From Saccostrea echinata (taxonomy: Eukaryota), in assembly GCF_033153115.1 (NCBI RefSeq), contig NW_026889803.1:7874001-7938000 (forward strand): a DNA stretch of 64,000 bases. The letters are read 5' to 3'. Within the stretch, counting starts at the first letter, position 1, and every line of letters starts with the position of its first letter. A model generated the notes under the pieces. That model searched no databases. It had not been told where the DNA came from and worked only from the letters and a program-made list of their open reading frames with translations. The translations under genes were made by a program, and so were the position numbers. Positions 540 to 50,500 of the stretch are shown in pieces.

Positions 540-3500
540 AGTCCACATTCATCAGTTGTTCAGTCTGCAGCATTTGCTCTATCAAATCTGGCAAAAGAAT
601 CAGTGGAAGACTGCAAGTAAGTCACTCTCCAAAATCTCTTAAGTTTGTAAAATAAAACCCTATCAGAATACATTAGACTGAATGATTTATTTCTGTACAT
701 TTTCTGTGATATCTGTATTTAGGGAGATGGTTCAGGCCTCCGTCATTCCTAATCTTCTTCGACATTTCTCCTACTCACCAGAAAATCTAGATGTTTTGGC
801 AGAGGTATCATGGGTCTTCACTTATCTTGCAACTAGGTAAGACATCAGTAACTTAAAAATGTGGTTGTTTAAAAGTGTTATCTTACTATATTGCCTCATC
901 CCATATACACATGTACATGTATTTATTTGCAAAAGAATGATCTGTGTTTGACCTTCTTCTCACAGATTTTCTAACTTAAAATATAAAAATTAAGGTCAAA
1001 TTGAGATTCATTTAAATGATGGACATGAACTGCATGTTTTACAAAGGATTTTTTTTTTTATTTTTAAGTGGACTCTTCTTGGAGGAAATGTCATCAAATG
1101 GTGTAATAACTAAAACTGTTAGTTTATTGGTGACATTGTCAGACATAATGCCTCATAAAGCTCAGGTATGATAAACACAGAAGCTGGGACACTTGTATGC
1201 AGTTTAATGAAGTTAACATGAAATGTTATTTAATTAATTCTAACAATGTTAAGAATCAAAAATAGTAATGAATGTGTACATATGTGTATATACATAAAAC
1301 AATGTTATATTATTATATAATATAAAGGTAGGATGGGGAAGAAAGTTCATTGAGCCTGCTTCTCTTGCATTAAAACTTTAGGTTTTGTATAATTTGCAAA
1401 GATACTATGTTAGAATGTAGCAGGGGTTACTTCAGTATGAATACATTGATGTAGAACCATTGATGAAAATGATGATTGGCTATGATCATCAGTGTGTTCA
1501 ATTGTCAGTATCATAAAAAGGTAGATCATTGAGGTTTTTCACTCAAGAGATTATTATAATGAAGAAATTGAAAAACTCGGTAATTTAATATTAATGTACC
1601 ACATTTACAATATTAGTTTCTTTATGGCTGCTCTTTAAATTCAAAGTTGACCTTAGGGTAGAAATTGAAAATCAAAATTTGAATTCATTGTAATACATGC
1701 TGGGACACATCATCTTTTACATTCATTTTTTTGATATCTATTAGAAAAAGAAAAGATCTCATTTTCATAAAAACATAAAAATATTTGGTCATCAGGTCGT
1801 GACCCCTTTGCTTCGCTGTCTTGGAAACATATGCAGTGGACCAGATCAGTACACTGTTGAGGCCAAACAGAATGCTGAGTTGCTACCAAGTCTCTGTAAA
1901 TACATGACCTCTGACCTTCGACATGTTCGCAAAGAAACCTTGTGGGTTCTCTCCAACATGACAGGTAAACCTATATTGTTAAGATATAATTGTGTACTGG
2001 ATATGACAAAATTGCAAATCTCTGTTATAAATTGTAAACTTGAAAACAATGGAAGTCATACATGTAAATTGCATAAATGTCATATACATTAACATATTCA
2101 CTGTAGTTAAAGTGAAAATGTGGAATATATGTTTGTATACTGTGGATCCTTTTAGTCACGAGTTTGTTTCTGCATTTATCGCAATTGATAAATTTTAAAC
2201 AAAAATTTTTATTGATAAATAATTGTATACAAACAGAATCTTGGTGTGGATAGGAATCTCCATGTCTGTCTGTCCCACTTCATGTCTAGGTATAGTTTTA
2301 TAAATGGGGAACATTAGAAGATCATACTTACTTAGGGTACCGTGATTCTAGATCAAGATGAATTGATCAGGTCAAGGTCACATGATTTGGAAGTGTAAAT
2401 TCTATTTGTACATAGAGAAGGAATGTCATCCTTGACCACTGAATGCCCTTGTCTAGATGGTCTGTGTTGACTAAAAGTCACTGTCATTTGGACAATATAT
2501 GGGATTTAGATTAGAAGAATTAATTTTTCTAACTTTGAAATACTCATTAGAACATTTCTATTTACCTTGTTATCAGGTGATCTTGGAGTGTGTAAGGAAG
2601 TTGCATTTGGCCCAATCCTACCCCATGTCCTGGAGCAGGTGCCTGCAGCATTTGACATCAAAACAGAGGTAAGGGAATTAAATAAAATTTCTTTGACTTA
2701 AGTAATAAAACATTTATAATTTTGGAATCTAGTGATCTTTTTTGATTAACGATGTACATGTTAATGGGAATACAATGCACATTTTTAAAATTTTTTAGTT
2801 TTTTAGCTCTACTGGTCAGAGACCAGAAGAGCTTATGTGATAGAAATGTGTCCGTCGTCCGTCCGTCTGTCTGTCCGTCCGTCTGTAAACAATTTTTCAA
2901 AATGCTACTCCTCCTACAGTTTTGGTCTGATTTCAATATAATACATAATTCTGTGTATCGGTTTTTGATTTCGATGAACGGTGTTGCCATGGTTACTAAA
3001 AATAGAAATTTCTGTGAAAAACATTCAAAATGCTACACCTCCTACAGTTTTAGTCTGATTTCAATATAACTTGGCACACAAGTAGACTATACTAAGATGC
3101 ATAATTCTGTTTATCGGTTTTTGATTTCGATGAACGGTGTTGCCATGGTTACTAAAAATAGAAATTTCTGTGAAATACTTTCAAAATGCTACTCCTCCTA
3201 CAGTTTTGATCTGATTTCAATATAACTTGGCACACAAGTAGACTACACTAAGATGCATAATTCTCTTTATCGGTTTTTGATTTCGATGAACGGTGTTGCC
3301 ATGGTTACTAAAAATAGAAATTTCTGTGAAAAACATTCAAAATGCTACTCCTCTTACAGTTTTGATCTGATTTCAATATAACTTGGCACACAAGTAGACT
3401 ATACTAAGATACATAATTCTTTATATCGGTTTTTGATTTCGATGAACGGTGTTGCCATGGTTACTAAAAATAGAAATTTCTGTGAAAAACATTCAAAATG

Positions 3501-34500: not shown

Positions 34501-37500
34501 AATACAGAACTGCACATATTCCAACCACACATCTACAGCTAAAATTAGATATGGATGTTTTATAGTATGTTTCAGTGTAAAAATGGCTAAATATAAATTA
34601 ATATTGAAACATGCAAGTATGTCTGGCCTGACAAAAATCCTTATTCAAGTAGCATGACAATTTAATGTATGAATGCAAGGAGGTTAGAAACTGTTGTTAC
34701 ATGTATCTGTTACTGTATTTTAAAAGATTAAGATTGCCATCTGGACTTTCACCATTATTTTTTTTTAATTAACATGACTTACACAGATAGTCTTTTACTG
34801 CCCTCTCAAACAGGTCATAGACATGCTTCCTCTCACTTTCATCTGTTGCCAAAGGAATCTCATCTCTGAGCCATTCCAACCACAGATCTAAACAATCAGA
34901 GAAAAATGAATACCATAAATGTCTGTAACAAAACAACGTCAAACACTATTAAATTTTACTTTAAAAAAATACCAAAAAAACCATTATATTTGCCATCATT
35001 TGGCTAAAGTGATAAAAAAATTCAAGATTCTTAAATGATGTATAAATGGTACATGTGCAAGGGGTGATCAAAAAGTTTGCGAACTATCTCTATATCTACA
35101 AAACCAAAATTCAGATCAGAATGAAATTTCGCACACATATACATGTAGTCATAAATATGTTCAATAAAGAGCAGATATTGAGTAATGTTTTGCTCTGCAT
35201 TTATGATGTCATATTGTGAAATATTTAGATGACTTGTGACAAAAAATGGTTGAATCCATTGTACTCAAACAAGGAACGGCTATAAAGTTTAAGTTAAATC
35301 TTGGAAATTCCTTTGCAGTTGCATATAATAATCTGTACCAGGTTTATGAAGGCAAATGACTTGCCAGAAGTTTAATTATTAATTTGATTGTTTTAGTGAA
35401 GGAAGGGAGATGGTTAAAAATAATGTTCGTTCTGGTGCCTAGTGAAAGTAAGCTTGGAAAGAGATGTGTCCTTAGTTAAGCAATAAGATATCAATTGTAA
35501 CAGGCTTGGGTTAAAGTTTATGACAAATGTCTGTGGACTATACAACAATTCAATTTTAATTTTTTATTCCATTTCAAACCGGCATTTTTATCAACTGAAG
35601 CGGTCAATTTGGCCGGTAGCAGCTCTTAGGGAGAACACTGTATACATATTTATACCTTGGACACTGAGATTTTTAGATCAGAAGTCTTTTAATATTAAAG
35701 GTGCTTAGACACAGATTTGAAGTTAATATTTTCTCAAATTTTCTGTATAATATCACGACTTATATATTGCAATAGCATTTCACATGAAAATATAATTAAA
35801 AACTTATTTTATCTAGAAATTATTGGAACTACGAATTCCTAGACGAGTTTGATTAACACATCATTGCACTTTCACAAATTTTATCTTTGTCCTTAATATT
35901 TAAGAAAAGAAGTGATTTTGTTGTGTATTAATGAAAAACATTACATCTATAATTCAGAAAATTCAGAGTAGAAATGTGCGAAAGCAAACCCTCTCACTAA
36001 TATCATCAGCCCGTGCTCAGTGTTGTGTACAGAGTTTAACAAATTGAATACACCCGTGAAACGTAAACTGTTTTTGTAAACAGGGCACAAGCTCTGTTAT
36101 TGTTAATGTTTACGATTCACCGGGTGTGTTCAATTGTTAAAGTCTGCACACACCACTGAGCACGGATTGACAATACTGTGAGTGGGTTTTGCTTTCGAAC
36201 ATTTCTACTCTGAATTTTCTGGATTATAGTTTTAATTTTCATTAATACACAACAAAATTGCCACTTTTCTTAAGTATTAAGAATAAATTTAAAATTTGTG
36301 AAAGTGCAAGGATGTGTCAATCAAACATGTCCAGAAATTTGAAGTTTCAATAACTTCGAGATGAAATAAGATTTTTATTTTATTTTAGTATGAAATGCTA
36401 TAGCAACATATAAGTCATGAAATTATACAGAAAATTTGAGAAAATATTAACTTCAAATCTGTGTCCAAGCACCTTTAATAATCAGAAGTAACTCATGAGA
36501 TTTCTCTGAATTTGTATGACTTCCCAAAACATCTTTTTTCCCAATTATGGAAAAATCATCATCATAAATAATACATGTTGAGGAAAGTCTAATACTGGAC
36601 CCATGATGTCATCCTTTTTTTTTTTTTTTGTTTTGTTTTTGGTGATCTAAAAAAGCAATGGCAGAAGACACTGAAGATTGTCTTCCGGTGTCATTATCTT
36701 ACTGAGTTAAATTGTATTACCTTGAGTTAGGGGAAAGTACTGGCTCATTTTCTCTCTTGCGTCTCTAAGTTTCTCCAGTTCTCCAGTGTTACGGAGAAGT
36801 TTTATCATTTCTGTGTGTCCATCATACAAGTACGGATTTTCCTCTATCTGTTTAAAATATATATATCACAATTGAATAAAAAATGATTTCACTGAAATTC
36901 AGAAAATCTTTCATCCAAGAAACTAAATTGGGTATACCTTTGATAAAATTGAAATAATTTTATAAATAATAGTTAATTAATGTAATATCGACAATTTGGG
37001 TGACAACAATTCTAACAAGAGGCTCATGGGCCACAATACTAACATGAGTCACCTTGGTCCTGTTGTTCATCACATACCTGTCAACATTCCAAATATTTTT
37101 GGGGGGAGAAAACACGCGATGACCTTTTTTGATAGTAAAAAGTCATCGCGCGTTCTTTTTGTTCATACTGATAACTAAGAAATAACAAATGATACACTTT
37201 AATGTTCTTTAATCTAATTGTAAGCTGCTGATTTAGTCAGCTTTAGAGTGTCCTTAGAAGGTTTCACTTGATGGCATTCCTCTTTACAGTTTATTTTAGC
37301 ACATAGAAGACTACATAGTGTCTGATTGTCCATGGAAGCTCTTTGTTCTGTCTGTATTTTTCTCACAAGGGAGAACACCCTCTCACAATCTGCATTGCTG
37401 TTTGGGATACAGCACATAGACTGAGCAATTTTATTAAGAATTGGGAATCTTGGTGTTCCAGAGACTTTGTTGGTGATTTTCCCCATCTCTCCCCAAAATG

Positions 37501-40500
37501 AGTCTATTCTTGTCTGCCCCTTCTCAAAGTTTGGAAGGTCACAGTCAGGAGAAACACTGAAATCCAGATACTCCTCTTCCAACTTTGGGAAGTCCTTTTC
37601 CTGAACTATGGCAGGGAATCTTCTGGCAATCTCCACTATAGACTGTAAGCTGGTCTCTTCCCTTCTGTGAGGATTCAAGAATCCTAAATTGTTGACAACT
37701 GGGTCCTTGAATGGAAAGTGCTTTAGCATTTTCTTTGTGATGGCACAGTAGAACCCCCTTACATTCCTAGAATTAGACAAAAACAAAGAGGTATAATATC
37801 AGTATGAGTTTTTGTATATTAATGCAACATTCCTTAATACATGATGAACACTGCATACCACAAATATCTGAAGAAAGTTTTTTTAGCAACTTATTAATTT
37901 ACTTTCTTTACTTAAACTGAGCTAAGAACTGACAGCTTAAAAAACTTAAAAGGTCAGAATCTAAACTTACTGGAAAAAAATTGCCAAGTCTACTGGTGGA
38001 ATATCCTCATCATTCTCTGCAATGTAGAACCTGGTAAGAATTCCAACTGCAAGTATGTTATCTTGGAGCTGGTTTTCTGGATTTTGGAAGTCCACACTGA
38101 TGAGGTCCTTGGAATTCTTGATTATTCCTGCCTTTATAAAACGGCCAAGGAATTTTCTTAGAAGTTTGTGGATTTCTTCTCCAAGATATCCAATCCTTGA
38201 TTCATCAGCCTACAAAGATAGAAGAAGAAATCAGTACTTAAGTAATATACAGTTCTGTAATTTTGTGATTTATTAAAACAAAATTATCAATATATTAAGA
38301 TTATAGCTTATATACCTGAAATGTAGTGTTGAACTCATTCAATGGCTCCAACACATAACCTAAGAAGTGGAATGTCATCCTCATCTCATGGCTTCTGAGG
38401 AGCTCTGCCACTCTCTTAACTCTTCCAGGCTTCTCTACATCACTGTGTGAGTTGAAATAGCTTGTCAGAGCAGGCCAGTGGTGCAGCAACCTTTTGACAC
38501 ACTTCTCAAGACTTAGCCACCTGGTTGAGCAGTGCTTCAGAAGTTTTGAAGGGTCAACATCACAGAAGTCCAAGTATTCCTTGTATGTTTCCTTACGTAA
38601 TGCACTGTTAAAAGAAAAGAAGTAAAATCTAAGGTCAAGATAACAGATATAAAGTGTGCAATTTGAAACTATGTAAAACTGAAAACTAAGTTAAATATTA
38701 CCAGTAGATGTATTTATTAATGTATTTATTAGATAAATGTTTTACCTATGGTGAAAATGATAATAGACGTCAACAAGGAGGTCATCTACAGGAAGGGACA
38801 GACTTTTGACACCAGCCATTGTGCAGAGATTGGCCAAATGACAAATGCAGCCAATGTCAAAAACATGTGGCTGCATTTCCTTGATCTTTGTCATCACTGA
38901 ATTCTTCTTGCCCATCATGACATTACAGTTGTCAGAGGAGAAAGCAATCAAGTTTTCCCAAGGAATGTTGTTGTTTCTACAAAATACATTGATAAATTAA
39001 GAACAATTCCCTTATTGAAATCTTTATCTGTAAAAAAAAAAAAAAAGGGGGGTATTCAATATAAAATCTATACACATTGAACTTACATAAAAACTTGTTC
39101 AAGGTGGTCAAATATATTCTGGGAAGTTCCCACATTGCAAATTGGCATGTCCAAAAATTGAGTTACTGCCTGATTGTCAAAGTATCTGACAAATATAGCA
39201 AGGGTTTTCTCAGAGTTTCTATCATTGCTTTCATCACAGGCTAAGGAAAATGGCTTTGTCCTGCAATTTTGAACTACTTCCTTGTGAAGCTGAGGGGCAA
39301 GGGCGTTCTTGACAATCATGGTAGTCTTTGTGCGGCCACAGGCAAATTTTTTTAGCAATCTGGCTGTCAGGAAACATGGACTTGCAGAGTTTCGTGAAAT
39401 GGTCTGCAACAGCAAATGGGATGTTGTGCTCCGCAATGAAATTTGAAAATAAAAATTCTGCTTTCACCACTCCTGAAATGGAAATTATTTGGTCAAAGAT
39501 CAACTTAATGTACTTGAAAATATAAACTATAAATATGTAGTTTTTTGCATGTTTAAATATTACAAAATCATTTAACTGCATTCTCCCTCATGACACTATG
39601 TCTGTTACATTCATTAAAATTTACATTTTCATTAATTTCAGTACATATTTCACCAATTTCAAACAAGTGCAATTTGCAGTTCTTTAAATTATGATACGTC
39701 TTACCTTCATCACTTGAAGTTGTCAAGAAATTTTGTATTGGCATTGTGACGTTCTGTGATTTTTTGCTGCTTTGATGAGCTGCTGATGAAACATGCTTCA
39801 TAAGATAATTTTTTTTACCGTGGTCAATCTTTATATTTTTCATACACAGTCTGCAGATAAGCATGATCTTCGCCTTTCACACTTTTTGTTAGCCAACCTT
39901 GGAATTCTGCTTCTTTTTCCCAAGAATTTAGGTACTTGCAGACGTATCTTTTCTTTTTTGGCTTTGGTGGTGTATTTTCCATGCTTAAAAACTTCGTACG
40001 TGATTATAATAAGGAATGCCATATTTCTAAAACTTATTTCCATTTATAAGCCGTTTATTAGTATATTGTCATATTTTGCTGCAGAGTGTCAATTCGACAC
40101 TAGCTCGTATCCCGTTGTCATTTTTCTAATGTGTATTTCTAAAATTTCCACATCTGGCATGCCTGTCTCTGTTAATAAACTCTGCTAATGAGAATCGGAA
40201 GCAATTACAATCCCAGTAATCACTGGTAGCACAGTTGACACCTTGTTGATTACCTGTTATCAGCAGCAATAAACATGTATCTACCGATAAACAATGAACT
40301 GCCATCTTCTCTTTCACAGGAAATATGGTATTATTCAAAGCGAAATCGGTAAAAATTCCGGATTTCTTAAAAATCAGTAGAAATTGGGGGTAAAAAATAT
40401 ATCGGTAGACAAGCGGTAGAATGGGTTCAAAATCGGTAGACTCCCGAAAAAATCGGGAGAGTTGACAGGTATGTCATCATTATTTTTACTTTTTTTTTAT

Positions 40501-41458
40501 TTGTTAATTTCTTCTTTAAATATCATGAAAATTCAGAGTACATATTGAGGACCAAAATCTAGCCCAAAGAGAGCTCATATGATTTAATCAAGAATGAATA
40601 TGTACAATGTTGGGATGTTTCAATATCAATACAATTAGCTGCAGAACTGTAGCGTTATAGTTTAATATTTTAGTCTTTGACCATAACGCTACAGATCACG
40701 TCATGCAAATATTGTGCAATTTACAGCGCAAGATTTTCTGCACTTTTTTGGGATCGATGTATTTCGCCACTTTCCAGCATTGTTCAATCAACCTTTCATT
40801 CCCTAATTCTAAACATATTCTATGACCAACCTGTATATTTTTTCCACCTCTTAACCCTTTATAATTGTCTCTACAGACCAATAAACTCGCTTGTTGTGAA
40901 TTTGTTGTTGGATGGCATAAAATTGAATTTATTCAAGACTTAAATATAAAACCAAACCGCTACAGTTCTGCAGCTACAATACAATCAACACGATCCTTGT
41001 GTTCTAAGAAGATTTTTTTCTTGTTCATGTCTACACATGCAACATGTAAAATTTAGATGTCTGATTTCGACCCAACCCTAGTGTAGACCAGTCCCAGGGC
41101 TCATAATTTAAAAAAAAATTATTCCATGTAACTTAGGTGTGTTTTGCTTTTTAATAAATAAATAAAGCCATTATAAAGGAAAAACTCAGTATATGAAATT
41201 GTGGGGTAGCATTTGTATCTATAGATGTTCTAGGGATTTGCATGTGAATCATGTACACTGTTAATCAACCTGCGTCTGAAGTTCCTCAAGCCTCTTTTTG
41301 TTTGCTTCCTCGTCGTCATCATCCTCACTCTCTCCGCCGGAATCACTAGAACTGGAGTTGTCAGATTTCATTTCTGCATCCTCTGTTTCTTCTGCATTAT
41401 TCTCGCTCTCCTCTTGAATAATTTCGAGGGAATCTCCTCTATCCATGCTTTCCGCCAT
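23171..41458 (-). CDS. SART3: SART3 / p110 / Prp24, U4/U6 snRNP recycling factor
   Basis: 23 exons: 41270-41458, 36721-36847, 34783-34887, 34354-34538, 33702-33807, 33485-33609, 32800-32955, 32567-32708, 32279-32386, 31743-31805, 31259-31317, 30896-31005, 30528-30640, 30356-30429, 30060-30248, 28552-28729, 27282-27445, 27083-27166, 26794-26898, 26076-26165, 25894-25977, 23654-23817, 23171-23354. Acidic N-terminus, HAT repeats (LWLEWL, VFERAL, NCPWCSQLW), Lys-rich region, two RRMs (AFVSNL, KGYAYVEF, LFVKNL, KGLAYVEF) and the C-terminal LSm-binding motif MSNDDFRKMLL. Confidence 0.95.
24838..25851. mobile_element. Non-autonomous PIF/Harbinger-like element
   Basis: TIRs GGCCACACCAATTTG / CAAATTGGTATGGCC with TTA target duplication. 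Confidence 0.75.
26360..26734. mobile_element. ~375-bp TTAA-targeting MITE (Kolobok-like), copy 1
   Basis: TTAA|GGACCCTCTCTACAC ... GTGTATAGAGGGTCC|TTAA. Homologous to 28916-29289 and 32999-33371. Confidence 0.85.
27508..28121. mobile_element. Non-autonomous element with a long terminal hairpin (possibly Crypton-derived)
   Basis: Near-perfect hairpin 27508-27653 with arms of about 60 bp, then a TTATTATAC...GTATAATAA-bounded, CpG-rich segment. Confidence 0.55.
28329..28534. mobile_element. TA-flanked MITE (Tc1/mariner type)
   Basis: TA|CTGTAAACCAACTTTTATTCGC ... GCGAATAATAGTTGGTTTACAG|TA. Confidence 0.8.
28916..29289. mobile_element. TTAA-targeting MITE (Kolobok-like), copy 2, inverted relative to copy 1
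   Basis: Near-identical reverse complement of 26360-26734, with TTAA flanks. Confidence 0.85.
29330..29970 (-). repeat. Degenerate pearl/HINE-like element with TGACCTTTGACCT subrepeats
   Basis: Repeated GACCTTTTGACCTCAAAATCAATAGG units ending in an ACAG/GACAG tract. Related to 43885-44470. Confidence 0.55.
32999..33371. mobile_element. TTAA-targeting MITE (Kolobok-like), copy 3
   Basis: More diverged homologue of copies 1 and 2, with TTAA flanks and the same TIRs. Confidence 0.85.
35058..35500 (+). pseudogene. Decayed mariner 5' end and transposase N-terminus
   Basis: TIR-like AGGGGTGATCAAAAAGTT, then interrupted codons resembling Q..AIKF...LG.S, VY and F.EGRE.V....RSG. Confidence 0.55.
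35699..36474. mobile_element. 776-bp foldback element flanked by TTAA
   Basis: The whole element is an imperfect palindrome: AGGTGCTTAGACACAGATTTGAAG ... CTTCAAATCTGTGTCCAAGCACCT, centred near 36087. Confidence 0.85.
37073..40473 (-). mobile_element. Full-length hAT DNA transposon with 6-bp TSD, in SART3 intron 1
   Basis: Perfect 13-bp TIRs CATACCTGTCAAC / GTTGACAGGTATG, TCATCA duplicated on both flanks, subterminal ATCGGTAG repeats, internal transposase gene. Confidence 0.92.
37214..39982 (-). pseudogene. Six-exon hAT transposase with two apparent +1 frameshifts
   Basis: Exons 39705-39982, 39087-39472, 38746-38976, 38316-38604, 37971-38209, 37214-37766. Zn finger CRLC..H....H, CDES, SSDN, CICH, TRWLS and SNADCERVFS. 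Frame breaks near 39856 and in the T7 run near 39350. Confidence 0.88.
40636..40976. mobile_element. 341-bp MITE with 9-bp TSD
   Basis: TIRs TAGCTGCAGAACTGTAGCG / CGCTACAGTTCTGCAGCTA, with CAATACAAT duplicated. Confidence 0.85.
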
Positions 41459-41514
41459 TGAGCGTAATTTTATCGTTTCAGATTTCGGACCTTCTTCACT
41501 AAAGAGTTCGTAAA
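41459..41514. promoter_or_regulatory. Compact bidirectional promoter region between SART3 and PISD
   Basis: Divergent ATGs at 41458 (-) and 41515 (+). Both lie in YY1-like AATGGC(G/T)G contexts. Confidence 0.7.
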
Positions 41515-44500
41515 ATGGCTGCGCCCATGTTGAAAAACGTTCCCATCAGGTAAGTCTAATCAAATTTTGATATATTTTTGCTTGTTAAGTATGGAACAAA
41601 AGTTTTAAGAAAAATTATTTAATAAATAATGAGATTCTACGCATGACACGTTTTTAAAAGTTCAGAAAATATTTCTCTTTAGCCTTTAGCTATGTAACAG
41701 AATTAAAAGTGGCTATAATATGCGTTGTATTTAGTGAGGCCACACTCCTACTAGCACTAGCTAGTGGGTTAACCCTTTAGCTTAGTCGGTAGAGCGTCGG
41801 ATTTTAAATCTGAGGGTTGTAGGTTCGAGCCACAGTGTGGACACTCCTATAGCTAATCGGTCATTGGTGCCCAACTACAAAACCCACATCAGGTGAGTGG
41901 TGTTTGTAGAGTCTCGTGTGCGAGATTTCTCAGGGGTAAGAAATCTCAAGAAAAAGAAGGGGGAAGTGTAACAGAATTAAAAGTGGCTATATGTGTTGTA
42001 TTTAGTGAGGCCATGCTCCTACTAGCACTAGCTATAGTGGGTTAACCCTTTAGCTCAGTTGGTAGAGCGTCAGATTTTAAATCTGAGGGTTGTAGGTTTG
42101 AGCCACAGTGTGGACACCCCTAGCTAATTGGTCATAGTTAGAATAATCTAACCCTGTCTTGGGACAAGCCCTCACCACACGTTTAAGTTAAACCGGGTGC
42201 GTAGGACAACATCAATTTGACGAAAGAACGTTCTATCTATTTATCCATTAATCTCCTATAGCATTGCTTACATCAAAGGTGCTTGAGGAGCCAAGATTGA
42301 GCAGTTGTTATCGATGAATTTGTTTTCACAATCTCTTGAAGAATTTCATGAACTTTGTAAAGGAATATTGCTGATTTTCATAAGCCACATATAAGCTTTA
42401 TAATATCATTATTTAAACTGTTGAATAAAAGGGAAACAAAAGTCTTCAAATAAAACAAAAAAACAATTGAGTGCACACCTCACTGCTCCACTGACTTTGG
42501 ATCGCTGTTTTATTCACCATCTCAATGAACACTATATCTTCGTTACAAATTTTTTGTATTTCTTTAACTTTCTCTTCATTTTCAACCTTTATGTTGATGC
42601 TGTGGTCACCGTCTCTGCAGTCCCCTTTGTGACACACAATGGCAGGGTCACCATTTTAGAATTTTCATGTTTTTTACATTCTGAATTTCAGTTAGATAGC
42701 AACAAAGATAATAATTAATTAATTAATTAATTAATTAATAATAATAAAATTAATTTATCATATTTTGGGTCAAATATTTAATATTTTCAGTCTTTGTGTT
42801 ATGTCTTGTAGATTTTTCAATTGTTGCTGTAGAAATGCAAGAATTGACAAAAGAACAGTTTCAAATGGTAAGCTATCCTTGAATATTTGAAGATAAAATT
42901 GTAAATGGAAAGTTCTCTGTCATTCAAAATAATTTTAAAAATTGCAGAGCTGCCAATATCATAAAATGAAAAATTGGAAGAAGGGGGTCCAGGGGCTGCT
43001 GGAGATTTTTTTGTGAATGGACCTTTTCATTATATAGTCAAACCTCATTATCTCAAACTAGATGGGACCGAGAAAAACTTTAAGATATCTGAAGGTTCAA
43101 GACATAGAGGGTAAAATACTTAAGAAATACATAGTTAGGACTTCCCAATCACTTCAACATATCCATGGTATTTGAGATATCCATGTTCGAGATACTGAAG
43201 TTCAACTGTATTTAGAAATGATTTATATTGCAATTTTGAATAGAAACTAACAACAACAAAACAAGCAATTGCTGGAAGAACTATGACTTTTTCATTATAA
43301 TAGTGAAAACTGAAGGTGAACAGCTACAAAAAATCTGGTATTTCAAACTTTTGACTGAGAGAAAAAAAGGAAATTGGAAGAATACATAGAAGAATCATAA
43401 CGAAGGCATATTTTAGGTGCTCAATCTGCACATGTAAGCATTACACCAAAATCATAAGGATTGGCAGTTCTGTGTGCATTATAACAATCATTTTAATACA
43501 ATTATGTCTAATTGTGTGAGCAAAGAAGTGGAAACAAATTTAATAATACCGTAACTAATTCACCAGTATTACACAATACTGAATGAGTCTTCACTGGATT
43601 TCTATACAATTAAAAAATACATTTATAGAGTAGAAAGCTGTTTTTATATTCAATGAATTTAGGTAAAATTAAGATTTATGCTGATGGACCCTCTAGGTTT
43701 AATTTCATGATAGATAATGTAAACAACAATATAAGTACACTGCCTGATATTAGAAATAGTGATTAACTGCAGCATTGCAGGGATAACCCTTGACAAGCTA
43801 ATTCAGGGAATTTTTGTCTCCTTTTTAAGGACAAAATATGAGGATGGAAGACAAAAAAAATGCAGATGGAGAAAGAAAAGAGGGATTGACCTTGACCTTT
43901 CACCTTTTGGCCTCAAAATCCTATTAATAGAGATCTTTCTCTTTAGAGAGATTTATTTCCTTAAGTTTCATTGCAAAAACTCAAACAGAACTAAAGTAAT
44001 CATCTGAAGAAAAAAACTTTACCCACTATATTAATTTTTGACCTTGATCTTTAATCTTTTGACCTCAACATCAATAAGGGTCTTAAAGTCATTAAGAATA
44101 TGATATAAAAATTTCATTGCAAAAAGTCCTACAAAAAAGTTATTTTCCGGAAATCTTTTAATGCAATATATGAATTTCTGACCTTGACATTTGACCTCAA
44201 AATCAAGAGAGGTCTTCTTATTATAATGAATTTCACTGCAAAAGTTCAAAGAGAATTAAAAGATGTTTGTGCTGTATATGAATTTTTGACTTTGACCTTT
44301 TAAGTCATCTATTATATAAGATTTCATTGCAAAAGTATAAAGGATTTTTGTGGTGATGTCCGGAAATTAAAGTATTACTCACAGACAGACATATGCATGG
44401 ACAGACAGATGGGCAAATGGACAGACCCAAATTAATATCCCATATTTGCTTGTAGTGCAAATAGGGGACAAAAATCAGAGGGAGATTTGTTTTATCCCAG

Positions 44501-47500: not shown

Positions 47501-50500
47501 ATTTTCCTTAAAAACAATAGTTATATATATATTATGAACTCAGAAATAATACGACATTCTAAAAACTATTAAACAAAGCATGAGGTGATAAACATGTCAC
47601 CGTTAACCCACCCCCCTCCCCGGAAACACACACTCACACGAGCTCGCTCTCACATATACATCAAAAAATGAAAGGAAAATAAAACTTAACCTATAAATAT
47701 TTTAAAATTAAAGGACACAAACAAACTTCTACAGATAAATTACACATAGGTGTTTAACCTATTACGTAATGATGTTTTACTAAATTATGGAGGAAATCAT
47801 TGTTCTTTGGGTTATGTACAATACCTGTGAACCATGCAGTAAAATGAGTGAGATTGATACATAGGTTATACTTATAGAAAGGGTGACATAACTAGTACAT
47901 GACGAGTTTGATAACACTGATATCTAACTGGGCTGTGAACTTTACACATATTTCCCCCCAATATAAACCATTGATTCAGTGTGCATGGTCACTTTGCGGC
48001 CCTTCCCGTTGGGGAAAACTTCGGGTTTTCATATTTTATAAATCTTAGTTCAGTTAATTTTTGCTCAATGTTTCATCGGAGAAGATTTGCGACACATGTT
48101 GGAGATTTCTGGATAAACTACCCAACGGAGCTTAAAATTTTTGAGTTAATATAAAAAAAACATTTATTATTATATAATATTTTTTTTTTTACATCTTTAG
48201 TTGATTTGTATCAAATCAGAAAAAAACATTGCTTATAGTCACGCGCAAAAGTGAAAAACAACATGATAAATGTTTTGTTTTCACTACCACTTGCTGAAGT
48301 GGACTTCGATCGGAGTGTGCTGTACAGTACAATCATTTTAGCAGTACTCTTGACTGGTAAAAATAGATCAGAGAAATTTTTGTTCAAGCTATGGGAAATG
48401 ACTCGATGGCAGACATGGTCCAAAATGGCACTTAATCGCCACAAAATCATGTTTGATGGTCTTCGTTGGGGAGTTCCATTAAGACAGATTAAGAAACTTC
48501 TTTCGATTCACAAAATAGTGCGACGCAAAAGATCCAGCATTCACAAGAAACGAGGACATAAAAATGTTAATCGCACGGTAAGAAGCGCCATGTTTTAATT
48601 CAGTTATAAAAGACAGTATTTTAAATGTTGAAACTTCAATTCGAGTTACAAAAGTTCGAGAAATAATGAGCATCGCATCATATTTGGTTGGAAATATTTT
48701 AATTTTCTACACAGGTTGTAAGCGCGGGCCTCCAAACCCCAGGGGCTTTGAGACTCGCATCTAAACGGCTATTCCATGCGGGAAGGTGACCCATAGTGGC
48801 CCCAAACTATCTAATCTTTTAATCTCTATTTTATGTAAAGTGTCACTGTAAATCTTTATTTTCTAGCAAAATTTTAATTTTAAGATGTAAATTGTGAATT
48901 ACGTATTTTTTTGCAGAATAATTTGATAAACTAAAAAAATTTTTCGTTGAACGCGAAAAGAAAAAAAATACTTAAAAAAAATACTTAAAAAAAAATAAGT
49001 AGATAGCAAAACATTTATATTTAACTGTTAATACTGTTTTGAAAATGAAAAACCTTTTTTTTTTAAAAAAAATGTTCTACCTTTCGAAAACACGAATTTT
49101 AATCATGCTTTTATTTTGGTTTTGCTGTCTACCTATCTCTAGTAAATTGTGCTAAAATTGTATCTTTCTAATTATTAAATTATATATTTGCCGCAGTTGT
49201 TAGTGATTTTGATGGTGAGCACCACAACTTATTTTACAGATTGAAATGTATCGCATCATGCCACTCAAGGCGATGTCCCGAGCCTGGGGGAAATTTAACC
49301 AGCTAGAATTGCCGGTCATTCTAAGGAGACCACTGTTAGGACTGTACGTCTGGATGTTCGACTGCAAGCTGGACGAAGCCATGGAAACGGAACTGAGGAA
49401 CTATCGCAACCTTGGTGAATTCTTCAGACGTATTCTAAAACCGGACATGCGACTGATCTCAATAAAAGAAGAACTGGTAAATTTTTATGGCAATTTCTTA
49501 TCCAGGAATATCTTCTGTTTTGTTATATTAGCTTGCTCTTCCGAGTGATTATTAGGTGGCATCCAATGGGTAAAGCGTGTCTGACTGCACTCTAAATTAC
49601 ACTGGTCAAGTCTGTTTTGGTGGCTATGCCTGACCCAGACTTGGTTTGACATAGACCAAACTTGCTTGGATAATGTATATTATAAATGTTTTCCATTCAG
49701 TGGTAATTCAAAGGTTATGTATGCATAGTGAGTTACCATCTATACAAGTTAATTTCAGTTACGTGAACTCTACTACCTAAAAGGCCTGAATTGACGGAAG
49801 TGTAAGCTATACTAAAAGATAACAATGACATGAAGATCATGAGATATGTATTAAAATAAATTTTCTTTATTATTTTTTTTAACCAGACAAATCCAGCAGA
49901 TGGAAAGATCCTTCACTTTGGAGAAGTTACAGATGGAATTTTAGAACAAGTGAAAGGAGTAAATTACTCCGTCAAACATTTTTTGGGACCACAGACCTGG
50001 ATGAACGACTCTAACGCCCCCACACCACCGGCGAACATGACGGACGAAGAGTACTTCCGGGGATTGAAATTAAGACCCGGAAACAAACTTTACCACTGTG
50101 TTGTGTACCTGGCTCCTGGGGACTACCACAGGTTTCATTCCGCTGCCAAGTGGGACATTACCTACAGACGCCATTTTCCTGGTAGGGTTTACTTTATTTT
50201 CAAATAAAAGAGTAAAAATGAATGAAAATTAATGCCAAAAGTTAAATTGGTTTTAAAAATTTGTATAATCCAACTGATATAAATTCTGTGCTATCTCTTT
50301 ATTCAAGGAGAACTACTGAGTGTAAATCCAGGTATCGCTCGTTGGATCCACGGTCTGTTTGTCCTTAATGAACGAGTGGCTTACATGGGGGAATGGGAAC
50401 ATGGCTTCTTCTCCTATACTGCAGTAGGCGCCACGAATGTAGGATCCATCAAGATTTACTGTGATCAGGTAGGTCATAAAAGTTTACGTTCCTGTATGAG

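What the first reader, a model, noticed from the sequence alone, without database searches (positions are those of the whole stretch)
41693..42134. Miniature LTR retrotransposon carrying a tRNA-Lys-derived Pol III promoter inside each LTR
Seen: two ~170-bp direct repeats bounded by TG...CA, a PBS (TGGTGCCCAAC) one base after LTR1, a polypurine tract abutting LTR2, and about 100 bp of non-coding interior. Each LTR holds a tRNA-Lys-like A-box, arm and B-box. Known: the tRNA-Lys(CUU) PBS is TGGCGCCCAAC, one mismatch away. Plant Cassandra TRIMs carry 5S rRNA in their LTRs, and I recall tRNA-bearing counterparts (Ajax) described in invertebrates, so the class may be known even if this family is not. 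Inference: a SINE/LTR hybrid transcribed by Pol III, primed by tRNA-Lys and mobilised in trans. It sits about 180 bp from the SART3/PISD shared promoter.
Basis: partly seen in the sequence, partly recalled or inferred. Interest (0 to 1): 0.85.

Follow-up and report, generated by a model that had tools for sequence, protein, structure and literature searches.

The report
Known tRNA-bearing mini LTR retrotransposon (Helenus)
This is an old, non-coding miniature LTR retrotransposon with a decayed tRNA-like Pol III promoter module in each terminal repeat, lying in the first intron of the PISD gene of an oyster-like bivalve; it is real, but it belongs to the Helenus group, and almost certainly to the Helenus-6 family, published for oysters in 2024.

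Summary
Window 41693-42136 is a 444-bp LTR-interior-LTR element. Its two LTRs (about 171 and 170 bp) are 94.6% identical. It has a tRNA-Lys primer-binding site, a 19-nt polypurine tract and a 4-bp target-site duplication (GCTA/GTTA). Each LTR scores as tRNA in Rfam (32 and 35 bits; threshold 29).

It is not a local duplication. The genome holds 23 interiors and about 85 LTRs, including solo LTRs. Ten of 14 independent insertions have perfect 4-bp duplications.

That paper's Helenus-6_SaGl from Saccostrea glomerata (LTR 168, interior 101, total 437 bp, 4-bp TSD) has the same termini, PBS and PPT, and by eye nearly the same sequence.

Corrections:
- The LTRs are TGT...ATA, not TG...CA.
- The family PBS is TGGCGCCCAAC. 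The window copy carries a CpG C>T change there and a 2-bp deletion at the LTR/PBS junction.

The copy is old (LTR K2P 0.057, all transitions). It sits inside the terminal repeat of an older MITE and is spliced out with PISD intron 1. Pol III transcription and the autonomous partner remain unshown. Another agent of this scan reported a Helenus elsewhere in this genome (s1-812203).

The parts
41689..41692 (+). left copy of the 4-bp target-site duplication (GCTA)
   Evidence: Matches GTTA at 42137-42140 in 3 of 4 positions. Ten of 14 independent family insertions have perfect 4-bp TSDs at this register, and shifted registers do not match.
41693..41864 (+). 5' LTR (TGTAACAG...GGTCAT); the family LTR ends GGTCATA, and this copy has a 2-bp AT deletion at the junction with the PBS
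   Evidence: Contigs of other copies show 'AT put in behind 41862'. Same boundaries as the published Helenus-6_SaGl LTR.
41778..41834 (+). tRNA-like module of LTR1: A-box-like TAGCTTAGTCGG at 41778-41789, anticodon-loop T4 at 41802-41805, B-box-like GGTTCGAGCC at 41822-41831
   Evidence: Rfam RF00005 at 32.2 bits (gathering 29), model positions 8-63. No ARAGORN call. The triplet at the anticodon position reads TTA.
41865..41875 (+). primer-binding site TGGTGCCCAAC (family: TGGCGCCCAAC), complementary to the 3' end plus CCA of a tRNA-Lys(CUU)-type tRNA
   Evidence: The genome holds 17 sites reading GGGTTCGAGCCCCACGTTGGGCG. Kojima's Fig. S2C lists Helenus-6_SaGl under tRNA-Lys-CTT.
41876..41947 (+). 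non-coding interior between PBS and PPT
   Evidence: Conserved at 88-95% among family copies. The whole interior (PBS to PPT) of family copy L003 is 76% identical (z = 11.6) to that of a sister Helenus family whose LTRs are unrelated.
41948..41966 (+). polypurine tract AAGAAAAAGAAGGGGGAAG, abutting LTR2
   Evidence: The exact PPT/LTR junction occurs 11 times in the genome, always in TRIM copies.
41967..42136 (+). 3' LTR (TGTAACAG...GGTCATA)
42051..42107 (+). tRNA-like module of LTR2: A-box-like TAGCTCAGTTGG at 42051-42062, T4 at 42075-42078, B-box-like GGTTTGAGCC at 42095-42104 (CpG C>T in the box)
   Evidence: Rfam RF00005 at 35.2 bits. Motif tally.
42137..42140 (+). right copy of the 4-bp target-site duplication (GTTA)
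   Evidence: Other copies of the host MITE read TAGTTAGA at this point, so GTTA is the original target and the left copy changed T>C.
41687..41692 (+). first 6 bp (TAGCTA) of the left terminal repeat of an older MITE that the TRIM split; the MITE's own 9-bp TSD TTTAGCCTT lies at 41678-41686
   Evidence: full copies at L055:1191-1619 and in L027 start TAGTTAGA and have perfect 9-bp TSDs.
42141..42239 (+). rest of the internally deleted MITE (ends ...TTCTATCTA); the right copy of its 9-bp TSD, TTTATCCAT, lies at 42240-42248 (7 of 9 match)
   Evidence: (very high contig depth, edges at 42135, 42179, 42187 and 42239).
41550..42811 (+). intron 1 of the + strand gene (PISD), which contains the TRIM and the MITE
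   Evidence: A contig of run X2 runs from 41549 straight into letters found at 42812. A PS_Dcarbxylase domain lies at 49950-50207.

Best explanation
The element is a decayed copy of a Helenus-type TRIM. [quoted passage not shown] This copy belongs to the family published as Helenus-6_SaGl or to its counterpart in this oyster-like genome.

Shown here:
- LTR-PBS-interior-PPT-LTR architecture with fixed termini TGTAACAG...GGTCATA.
- 4-bp target duplications.
- Solo LTRs.
- A dispersed family of 23 interiors and about 85 LTRs.
- A PBS complementary to the 3' end of a tRNA-Lys(CUU)-type tRNA.

Inferred:
- New copies were made by reverse transcription primed by tRNA-Lys and integrated by the integrase of an autonomous Gypsy-type element acting in trans. 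The element has no coding capacity, and Kojima links animal Helenus with Gypsy.
- The tRNA-like module (A and B boxes, no acceptor stem, anticodon position TTA) acts as an internal Pol III promoter, not as a tRNA gene.
- A transcript would start about 10 bp upstream of the A box in the 5' LTR and run through U5, PBS, interior and PPT into the 3' LTR.

The window copy integrated into the terminal repeat of an older MITE inside PISD intron 1. It has since collected 9 transitions and 3 indels between its LTRs, a PBS mutation, a junction deletion and a B-box mutation in LTR2. It is spliced out with the intron. It is best read as an inactive relic.
For: - Anatomy.
- tRNA similarity in both LTRs above Rfam's gathering score.
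- Family census.
- Ten of 14 independent insertions with perfect 4-bp TSDs, and none at shifted registers except in low-complexity flanks.
- Solo LTRs with TSDs (L022-L028).
- PBS TGGCGCCCAAC in most copies.
- tRNA-Lys(CUU)-type 3' ends in the genome.
- Published class and family with the same LTR ends, interior ends, sizes (168/101/437) and 4-bp TSD.
- B box GGTTCGA intact in 20 of 31 LTRs despite its CpG, and a single T4 in 25 of 31, always in the anticodon loop.
- Nested insertion in a MITE, which rebuilds an exact empty site.
- Intronic position and splicing.
- Age.
Against: - No RNA evidence for a Pol III transcript. No listed run is on record as RNA, and the contigs that touch the LTR are low-depth pieces of other copies embedded in unrelated sequence.
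- No autonomous partner was found. The exact PPT/LTR junction occurs only in TRIMs. Of the 73 sites with an LTR end plus the Lys PBS, most of the 30 fetched carry a tRNA-like LTR end, and none shows a gag or pol ORF in the 1.5 kb downstream.
- Nine of the 23 interior-bearing copies owe their number to amplification of a larger host repeat, not to their own retrotransposition.
- All intact copies have LTR K2P of 0.025 or more, so no recent activity is seen.
- The Lys isotype of the LTR module rests on my recall of tRNA-Lys(UUU) and on Kojima's Fig. 2d, not on a test here.
- Identity to the published consensus was judged by eye, not computed.
Confidence: 0.9

Rival explanations
1. It is a TRIM, but transcription is by Pol II from the 5' part of the LTR. 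The tRNA-like module is then a passenger relic of an old SINE or tRNA capture with no promoter role.
For: - The tRNA module begins about 85 bp into the LTR, which leaves room for an upstream promoter.
- A CTATAT/CTATAAT motif lies at LTR positions of about 20-30.
- The module has lost its acceptor stem.
- A T4 lies only about 35 nt after the predicted Pol III start and could stop Pol III early.
- No Pol III transcript was shown.
- Kojima states that functionality is unproven.
Against: - A and B boxes persist across unrelated Helenus families in this genome and in six animal phyla.
- The B box is intact in 20 of 31 LTRs although it contains a mutable CpG.
- No AATAAA signal is present in the LTR.
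- Cassandra, the 5S analogue, is stated by Kojima to produce transcripts from its Pol III promoter.
Confidence: 0.3
2. It is a local tandem duplication of a tRNA-derived SINE and not an LTR element.
For: Two tRNA-like units 273 bp apart in one orientation.
Against: - The same LTR-interior-LTR unit occurs at 23 places.
- PBS and PPT are conserved.
- The 5' end is fixed about 85 bp upstream of the tRNA-like part.
- TSDs are 4 bp in 10 of 14 insertions.
- There is no A-rich or simple-repeat tail.
Confidence: 0.01
3. The LTR modules are functional tRNA genes, either tRNA-Lys or a UAA suppressor.
For: Rfam scores above the gathering threshold. Sister Helenus families in this genome fold as tRNA-Thr cloverleaves.
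Against: - Only model positions 8-63 match.
- There is no acceptor stem.
- ARAGORN finds no tRNA in the window or in 22 other loci of this family.
- The T-loop is one base short and the T-stem has an inserted base.
Confidence: 0.01
4. The copy has been co-opted as a regulatory element (Pol III/TFIIIC-bound insulator or enhancer) for the nearby head-to-head SART3/PISD promoter.
For: It lies 144 bp inside PISD intron 1 and about 250 bp from the mRNA 5' end of the minus-strand gene. LTR1 keeps an intact B box. SINE-like roles for such elements are suggested by Kojima.
Against: - Decay is neutral-looking (CpG transitions, indels) with no sign of constraint.
- The B box of LTR2 is mutated.
- No conservation data from other species could be obtained; the one related-species contig ends at 41555.
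Confidence: 0.04

Closest known systems
Helenus-6_SaGl (Saccostrea glomerata), Kojima 2024, Biology 13:119, PMC10886601, Data S1 and Table S1
   Same: - LTR starts tgtaacagag and ends ggtcata.
- Interior starts ttggcgcccaac and ends aagaaaaagaagggggaag.
- Sizes are 168/101/437 bp, against 170-171/102/444 here.
- TSD is 4 bp.
- The tRNA-like core is the same, including gattttaaatc and ggttcgagcc.
   Different: - All copies in this genome read AACTACAAAACCC and CACATCAGG or CACATGG variants where the published consensus has aactaaaaaaccc and cacatgg.
- Identity is roughly 90% by eye, so this is probably a different oyster species or subfamily.
- The host species is coded in the tools and could not be named.
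- No computed alignment to the consensus was made.
Helenus as a class (TRIMp3, tRNA type)
   Same: A TRIM with a tRNA-derived A/B-box module in both LTRs, PBS at a tRNA 3' end, PPT, 4-bp TSD as in all animal Helenus, and occurrence in Pteriomorphia bivalves.
   Different: The tRNA module here does not fold as a tRNA and is not followed by a T5 run. Sister families in the same genome do fold (tRNA-Thr-like by ARAGORN) and carry ATTTTT directly after the module.
Ajax (Kojima 2024) and Cassandra (Kalendar et al. 2008)
   Same: TRIMs with a small-RNA-gene-derived Pol III promoter inside the LTRs. Both are proposed to arise by SINE insertion into an LTR.
   Different: Both carry 5S rRNA-derived sequence and make 5-bp TSDs. 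Ajax is known only from two nemerteans and Cassandra from plants.
biv-TRIM (Satovic et al. 2019, PMC6934838)
   Same: A miniature LTR element of bivalves.
   Different: biv-TRIM has no canonical PBS and no reported tRNA module in its repeats, and it was not detected in Ostrea edulis. It is a different family.

Membership tests
TRIM (terminal-repeat retrotransposon in miniature) | Two direct terminal repeats of about 100-250 bp around a short non-coding interior, under 1 kb in total | tested here: met
   LTRs of 171 and 170 bp, interior of 102 bp, 444 bp in total. No ORF.
TRIM (terminal-repeat retrotransposon in miniature) | PBS just after the 5' LTR and PPT just before the 3' LTR | tested here: met
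   TGG(C/T)GCCCAAC one base after the LTR, and a 19-nt purine run abutting LTR2. Both are conserved across copies.
TRIM (terminal-repeat retrotransposon in miniature) | Dispersed copies with individual target-site duplications, plus solo LTRs | tested here: met
   23 interiors and about 85 LTRs. Ten of 14 insertions have perfect 4-bp TSDs. Solo LTRs L022-L028.
Helenus (Kojima 2024) | tRNA-derived sequence with box A (TRGCY...YGG) and box B (GGTTC) inside each LTR | tested here: met
   Rfam tRNA hits in both LTRs at 32 and 35 bits. Motifs TAGCTYAGTYGG and GGTT(C/T)GAGCC.
Helenus (Kojima 2024) | Animal Helenus make 4-bp TSDs | tested here: met
Helenus (Kojima 2024) | Transcription from the tRNA-derived Pol III promoter | not testable with these tools
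   No run on record as RNA, and contigs only. This is unproven in the literature too.
Helenus (Kojima 2024) | Mobilisation in trans by an autonomous LTR retrotransposon (Gypsy in animals) | tested here: inconclusive
   No partner was found among 11 PPT-junction sites and 30 fetched Lys-PBS sites.
Helenus-6 family (Helenus-6_SaGl) | Sequence similarity of LTR and interior to the published consensus | tested here: met
   Three exact word matches (10-13 nt) found only this family in Data S1. Ends, sizes and most of the printed sequence agree by eye. No computed percentage.
Functional tRNA gene | Complete cloverleaf with acceptor stem and a sense anticodon | tested here: not met
   ARAGORN found nothing in the window or in 22 family loci. 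Rfam aligns positions 8-63 only. The anticodon position reads TTA.
SINE (LINE-mobilised) | Starts at the Pol III transcription start, has a 3' tail, variable-length TSDs | tested here: not met
   The fixed 5' end lies about 85 bp upstream of the tRNA part, there is no tail, and TSDs are a fixed 4 bp.

The most novel reading that the evidence does not exclude
In this family one tRNA relic may supply both ends of the genomic RNA. Pol III would start about 10 bp upstream of the A box. The only T4 in the whole element, the one in the former anticodon loop (41802-41805 and 42075-42078), would act as a leaky terminator that is read through in the 5' LTR and used in the 3' LTR. That would define an R region of only about 35-38 nt and an RNA of about 310 nt.

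Sister families in the same genome instead place a T5 right after a complete tRNA-Thr-like module. Two LTR designs would then ride on one shared interior (76% identical) and one PBS, which implies modular exchange of Pol III LTRs on a common chassis served by one autonomous partner.
Probability: 0.15. Interest if true: 0.5.

Novelty: already known. Interest (0 to 1): 0.2.

Why it matters
As a discovery it matters little. Class, family, TSD length and primer were published in 2024, and this copy is an old intronic relic.

It does have practical value.
- It shows that a reader can spot a TRIMp3 element from raw sequence.
- It adds a census for one more bivalve genome: a small, old Helenus-6 family beside much larger tRNA-Thr-like Helenus families that all use the tRNA-Lys PBS.
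- It warns that tRNA-like hits in such genomes are mostly LTR modules.
- It shows that nine 'copies' of the family were multiplied by a host repeat and not by retrotransposition.

The open questions are experimental: whether Pol III really makes the template RNA, how a terminator inside R would be bypassed, and which Gypsy element serves Helenus. This genome, with several families on one interior chassis, would be a reasonable place to test them.

Tried and rejected
- ARAGORN on the window and on 22 loci of this family found no tRNA. The 'functional tRNA' reading is rejected.
- Search for an autonomous partner:
  - The exact PPT/LTR-start junction pattern gave 11 hits, all TRIM copies.
  - The LTR-end plus Lys-PBS pattern gave 73 hits. 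Of the 30 fetched, most carry a tRNA-like LTR end, and none has a gag or pol ORF in the 1.5 kb downstream.
  - Pfam on the longest ORFs gave only sub-threshold scraps, including an rve_3 fragment on the opposite strand of L085.
  - Two odd PBS hits (L053/L054 and L050/L055) proved to be further Helenus relatives.
I did not try to fetch more by another tool.
- RNA evidence: the one run search found no holder on record as RNA. The best share of words was 0.22, and organisms are coded. Laying four runs gave contigs only. They confirm the exons, the intron 1 splice and the high-copy MITE. They show no discrete LTR-initiated transcript, and no contig bridges the insertion site in a relative. This says nothing about silence.
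- Naming the species: no ORF of 200 aa or more is in the window, so a protein search was not spent on it.
- The bacterial-type promoter and terminator scan is irrelevant to a eukaryote and gave nothing.
- TG...CA ends with a 5- or 6-bp TSD were considered and rejected. The base after GGTCAT is A in nearly all 3' ends while the upstream flank varies, and only the 4-bp register matches.
- Primer read-through as the origin of the tRNA module was rejected. The module is in sense orientation on the same strand as the PBS, whereas copying of the primer would leave its complement.
- biv-TRIM (2019) was checked and is a different element.
- Comparisons are pairwise or by motif.
Full report
**What is there.**

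Window 41693-42136 reads as follows.
- A 5' repeat TGTAACAG...GGTCA(T).
- TGGTGCCCAAC at 41865-41875.
- About 70 bp of non-coding sequence.
- A 19-nt purine run AAGAAAAAGAAGGGGGAAG at 41948-41966.
- A second repeat TGTAACAG...GGTCATA at 41967-42136.

The two repeats align over 166 positions at 94.6% identity, with 9 transitions, no transversion and 3 indel events (K2P 0.057). Most of the transitions sit at CpG sites (read).

Rfam's tRNA model matches both repeats above its gathering score (41778-41834 at 32.2 bits; 42051-42107 at 35.2 bits; threshold 29). It matches only over model positions 8-63, that is D arm, anticodon arm and T arm without the acceptor stem. ARAGORN calls nothing. The triplet at the anticodon position is TTA.

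**It is a mobile family, not a local duplication.**

A search of the window's own 923-Mb assembly found the whole LTR-interior-LTR unit at many places, and LTR-only hits at many more. Exhaustive pattern counts give:
- 23 PBS-plus-interior sites;
- about 85 LTRs for one 28-mer at up to 3 mismatches;
- 11 exact PPT/LTR junctions.

Lining up the ends shows three things.
- The family LTR runs from TGTAACAG to GGTCATA.
- One T separates it from the PBS.
- The family PBS is TGGCGCCCAAC.

The window copy differs by a CpG C>T change in the PBS and by a 2-bp AT deletion at the LTR1/PBS junction. Contigs of other copies laid on the window show the same AT 'put in' there.

With the end placed at GGTCATA, 10 of 14 independent insertions have perfect 4-bp target duplications and the other four match at 2-3 of 4. 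Shifted registers do not match. Solo LTRs with their own duplications exist (L022-L028).

All favour an LTR element.

**The window copy in its setting.**

Laying public contigs showed a very high-copy repeat that starts directly after the element. Two full copies in fetched loci define it. It is a MITE of about 430 bp with terminal repeats TAGTTAGAA...TTCTATCTA and perfect 9-bp duplications.

In the window this MITE is internally deleted, and its first six bases (TAGCTA, 41687-41692) lie upstream of the TRIM. Removing the TRIM and one copy of GYTA rebuilds an intact MITE end, flanked by TTTAGCCTT and TTTATCCAT (7 of 9 match).

So the order is MITE first, then the TRIM into the MITE's terminal repeat with a 4-bp duplication. 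The original target was GTTA, and the left copy is now GCTA.

Both elements lie in intron 1 (41550-42811) of the + strand gene. A contig of run X2 goes from 41549 straight into letters that occur at 42812. The minus-strand mRNA ends at 41447-41467; I did not verify that it is SART3.

**What it is called.**

A full-text search led to Kojima 2024 (PMC10886601). That paper defines:
- Helenus as TRIMs with a tRNA-derived sequence in the LTRs;
- Ajax as TRIMs with a 5S rRNA-derived sequence;
- both, together with plant Cassandra, as 'TRIMp3'.

According to the paper, animal Helenus make 4-bp duplications, occur in Pteriomorphia bivalves among others, often use tRNA-Lys, and share PBS-region similarity only with Gypsy elements.

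Searching the paper's sequence file for short words of the window element hit a single family, Helenus-6_SaGl of the oyster Saccostrea glomerata. Its printed LTR starts tgtaacagag and ends ggtcata. Its interior starts ttggcgcccaac and ends aagaaaaagaagggggaag. Its table entry is LTR 168, interior 101, total 437 bp, TSD 4.

The boundaries I derived independently from the copies are exactly those of the published consensus. By eye the sequences are about 90% alike. All copies here share a few differences from that consensus, for example AACTACAAAACCC against aactaaaaaaccc. The host is therefore probably another oyster-like species or carries a sister subfamily. The tools give organisms only in code, apart from the labels 'mollusc metagenome' and 'seawater metagenome'.

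**How it most likely works.**

Shown:
- The architecture, the PBS and the PPT.
- The 4-bp duplications and the family structure.
- The genome holds 17 sites reading GGGTTCGAGCCCCACGTTGGGCG, 14 of them in a regular array on contig C54. With CCA added, that sequence is complementary to TGGCGCCCAAC(GTG).
- Sister Helenus families in this genome extend the match to 18 nt (TGGCGCCCAACGTGGGGC). The primer is therefore a tRNA-Lys(CUU)-type tRNA, as in Kojima's Fig. S2C.

Inferred:
- An autonomous Gypsy-type element supplies reverse transcriptase and integrase.
- The tRNA-like module is an internal Pol III promoter.

In favour of the promoter reading:
- GGTTCGA is intact in 20 of 31 LTRs although it contains a CpG, and the deviants are CpG decay products.
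- Unrelated LTR families in this genome all keep A and B boxes.

The module is in sense orientation on the PBS strand, so it is not a product of copying the primer.

The only T4 in the whole element is the former anticodon loop, present in 25 of 31 LTRs. If Pol III drives the element, that run must be read through in the 5' LTR. It could then mark the R/U5 border in the 3' LTR, giving an R of about 35-38 nt and an RNA of about 310 nt. This is my speculation and nothing here tests it.

**What argues for caution.**

- No run on record as RNA holds the stretch. The contigs touching the LTRs are low-depth pieces of other copies embedded in unrelated sequence. Transcription by Pol III remains unshown, as it is in the literature. 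A Pol II promoter in the first 80 bp of the LTR cannot be excluded.
- No autonomous partner was found.
- Nine of the 23 interior-bearing copies (L002, L008-L014, and L030 as a solo LTR at the same site) sit in a host repeat of at least 2.5 kb that is about 99% identical between loci. They were multiplied as passengers.
- Every intact copy has LTR divergence of 0.025-0.085, so the family looks long inactive. The window copy, with its mutated PBS, junction deletion and a mutated B box in LTR2, is a relic. CpG decay in a probably methylated gene body inflates its apparent age. I give no date because no rate was available here.

**Verdict.**

The name recalled (Ajax) belongs to the 5S type, and the LTR ends and TSD needed correction.

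The class and this very family are published, so novelty is 'already known' and interest is low.

The least ordinary things seen are side observations:
- several Helenus families with different LTR designs share one interior chassis (76% identity, z = 11.6, against unrelated LTRs) and one PBS;
- the loop T4 is the only possible Pol III stop in this family.

Noticed in passing
window 41678-41692 and 42137-42248; full copies at L055:1191-1619 and L027 about 2386-2795 (-): A very high-copy MITE with terminal repeats TAGTTAGAA...TTCTATCTA and 9-bp target duplications, about 430 bp at full length. In one DNA run its contig depth was about 6400, against about 4 for unique sequence. The window copy is internally deleted to about 105 bp and split by the TRIM. 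A 9-bp TSD suggests a Mutator-like origin, which was not tested.
   Followed up: partly
L008-L014, L002, L030 (G000 contigs C54, C33, C13, C16, C5, C1, C9, C3, C36): A repeat of at least 2.5 kb with a sharp 5' edge about 640 bp upstream of a Helenus copy. It is about 99% identical between at least 7 loci and carries the TRIM as a passenger. One locus (L030) has a solo LTR at the same site, and L002 (96.7%) keeps an undeleted interior. The nature of the host repeat is unknown.
   Followed up: partly
L055:9509-9829 (-), and 73 genome sites matching TGT[TG]ACATTTGGCGCCCAAC: Further and more numerous Helenus families. The LTRs are about 117-140 bp and contain a cloverleaf-forming tRNA-Thr-like sequence (ARAGORN anticodons GGT, AGT, TGT). 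This is followed directly by ATTTTT, a short U5 ending CTGTTACA or CTGTGACA, and the same tRNA-Lys PBS. The L055 copy is 321 bp with TSD CAGA. Its interior is 76% identical to that of the window family, while the LTRs are unrelated.
   Followed up: partly
L054:1000-1900 (G000:C56:6860000-6860900): A degraded Helenus relative. Its 5' LTR carries an insertion, and its 3' LTR region has expanded into a tandem array of about 9 units of 54 bp (seven overlapping 162-nt copies spaced 54 bp), which creates a spurious 154-aa ORF.
   Followed up: no
G000:C54:40109953-40125859: Fourteen exact copies of a tRNA-Lys(CUU)-type 3' half (GGGTTCGAGCCCCACGTTGGGCG), spaced about 1220 bp apart on one strand. This is probably a tandem tRNA gene array on the same contig as the window. 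The sequence could not be fetched.
   Followed up: no
window 37214-37786 (-): A 190-aa ORF with a hAT-family C-terminal dimerisation domain (PF05699, E = 2.6e-11). It is a DNA-transposon remnant near or inside the minus-strand gene.
   Followed up: no
window 41300-41549: Contigs of two runs that are probably RNA match exon sequence with no differences. The minus-strand mRNA ends at 41447-41467, and exon 1 of PISD ends at 41549. This supports the head-to-head arrangement noted earlier (s1-810221).
   Followed up: partly
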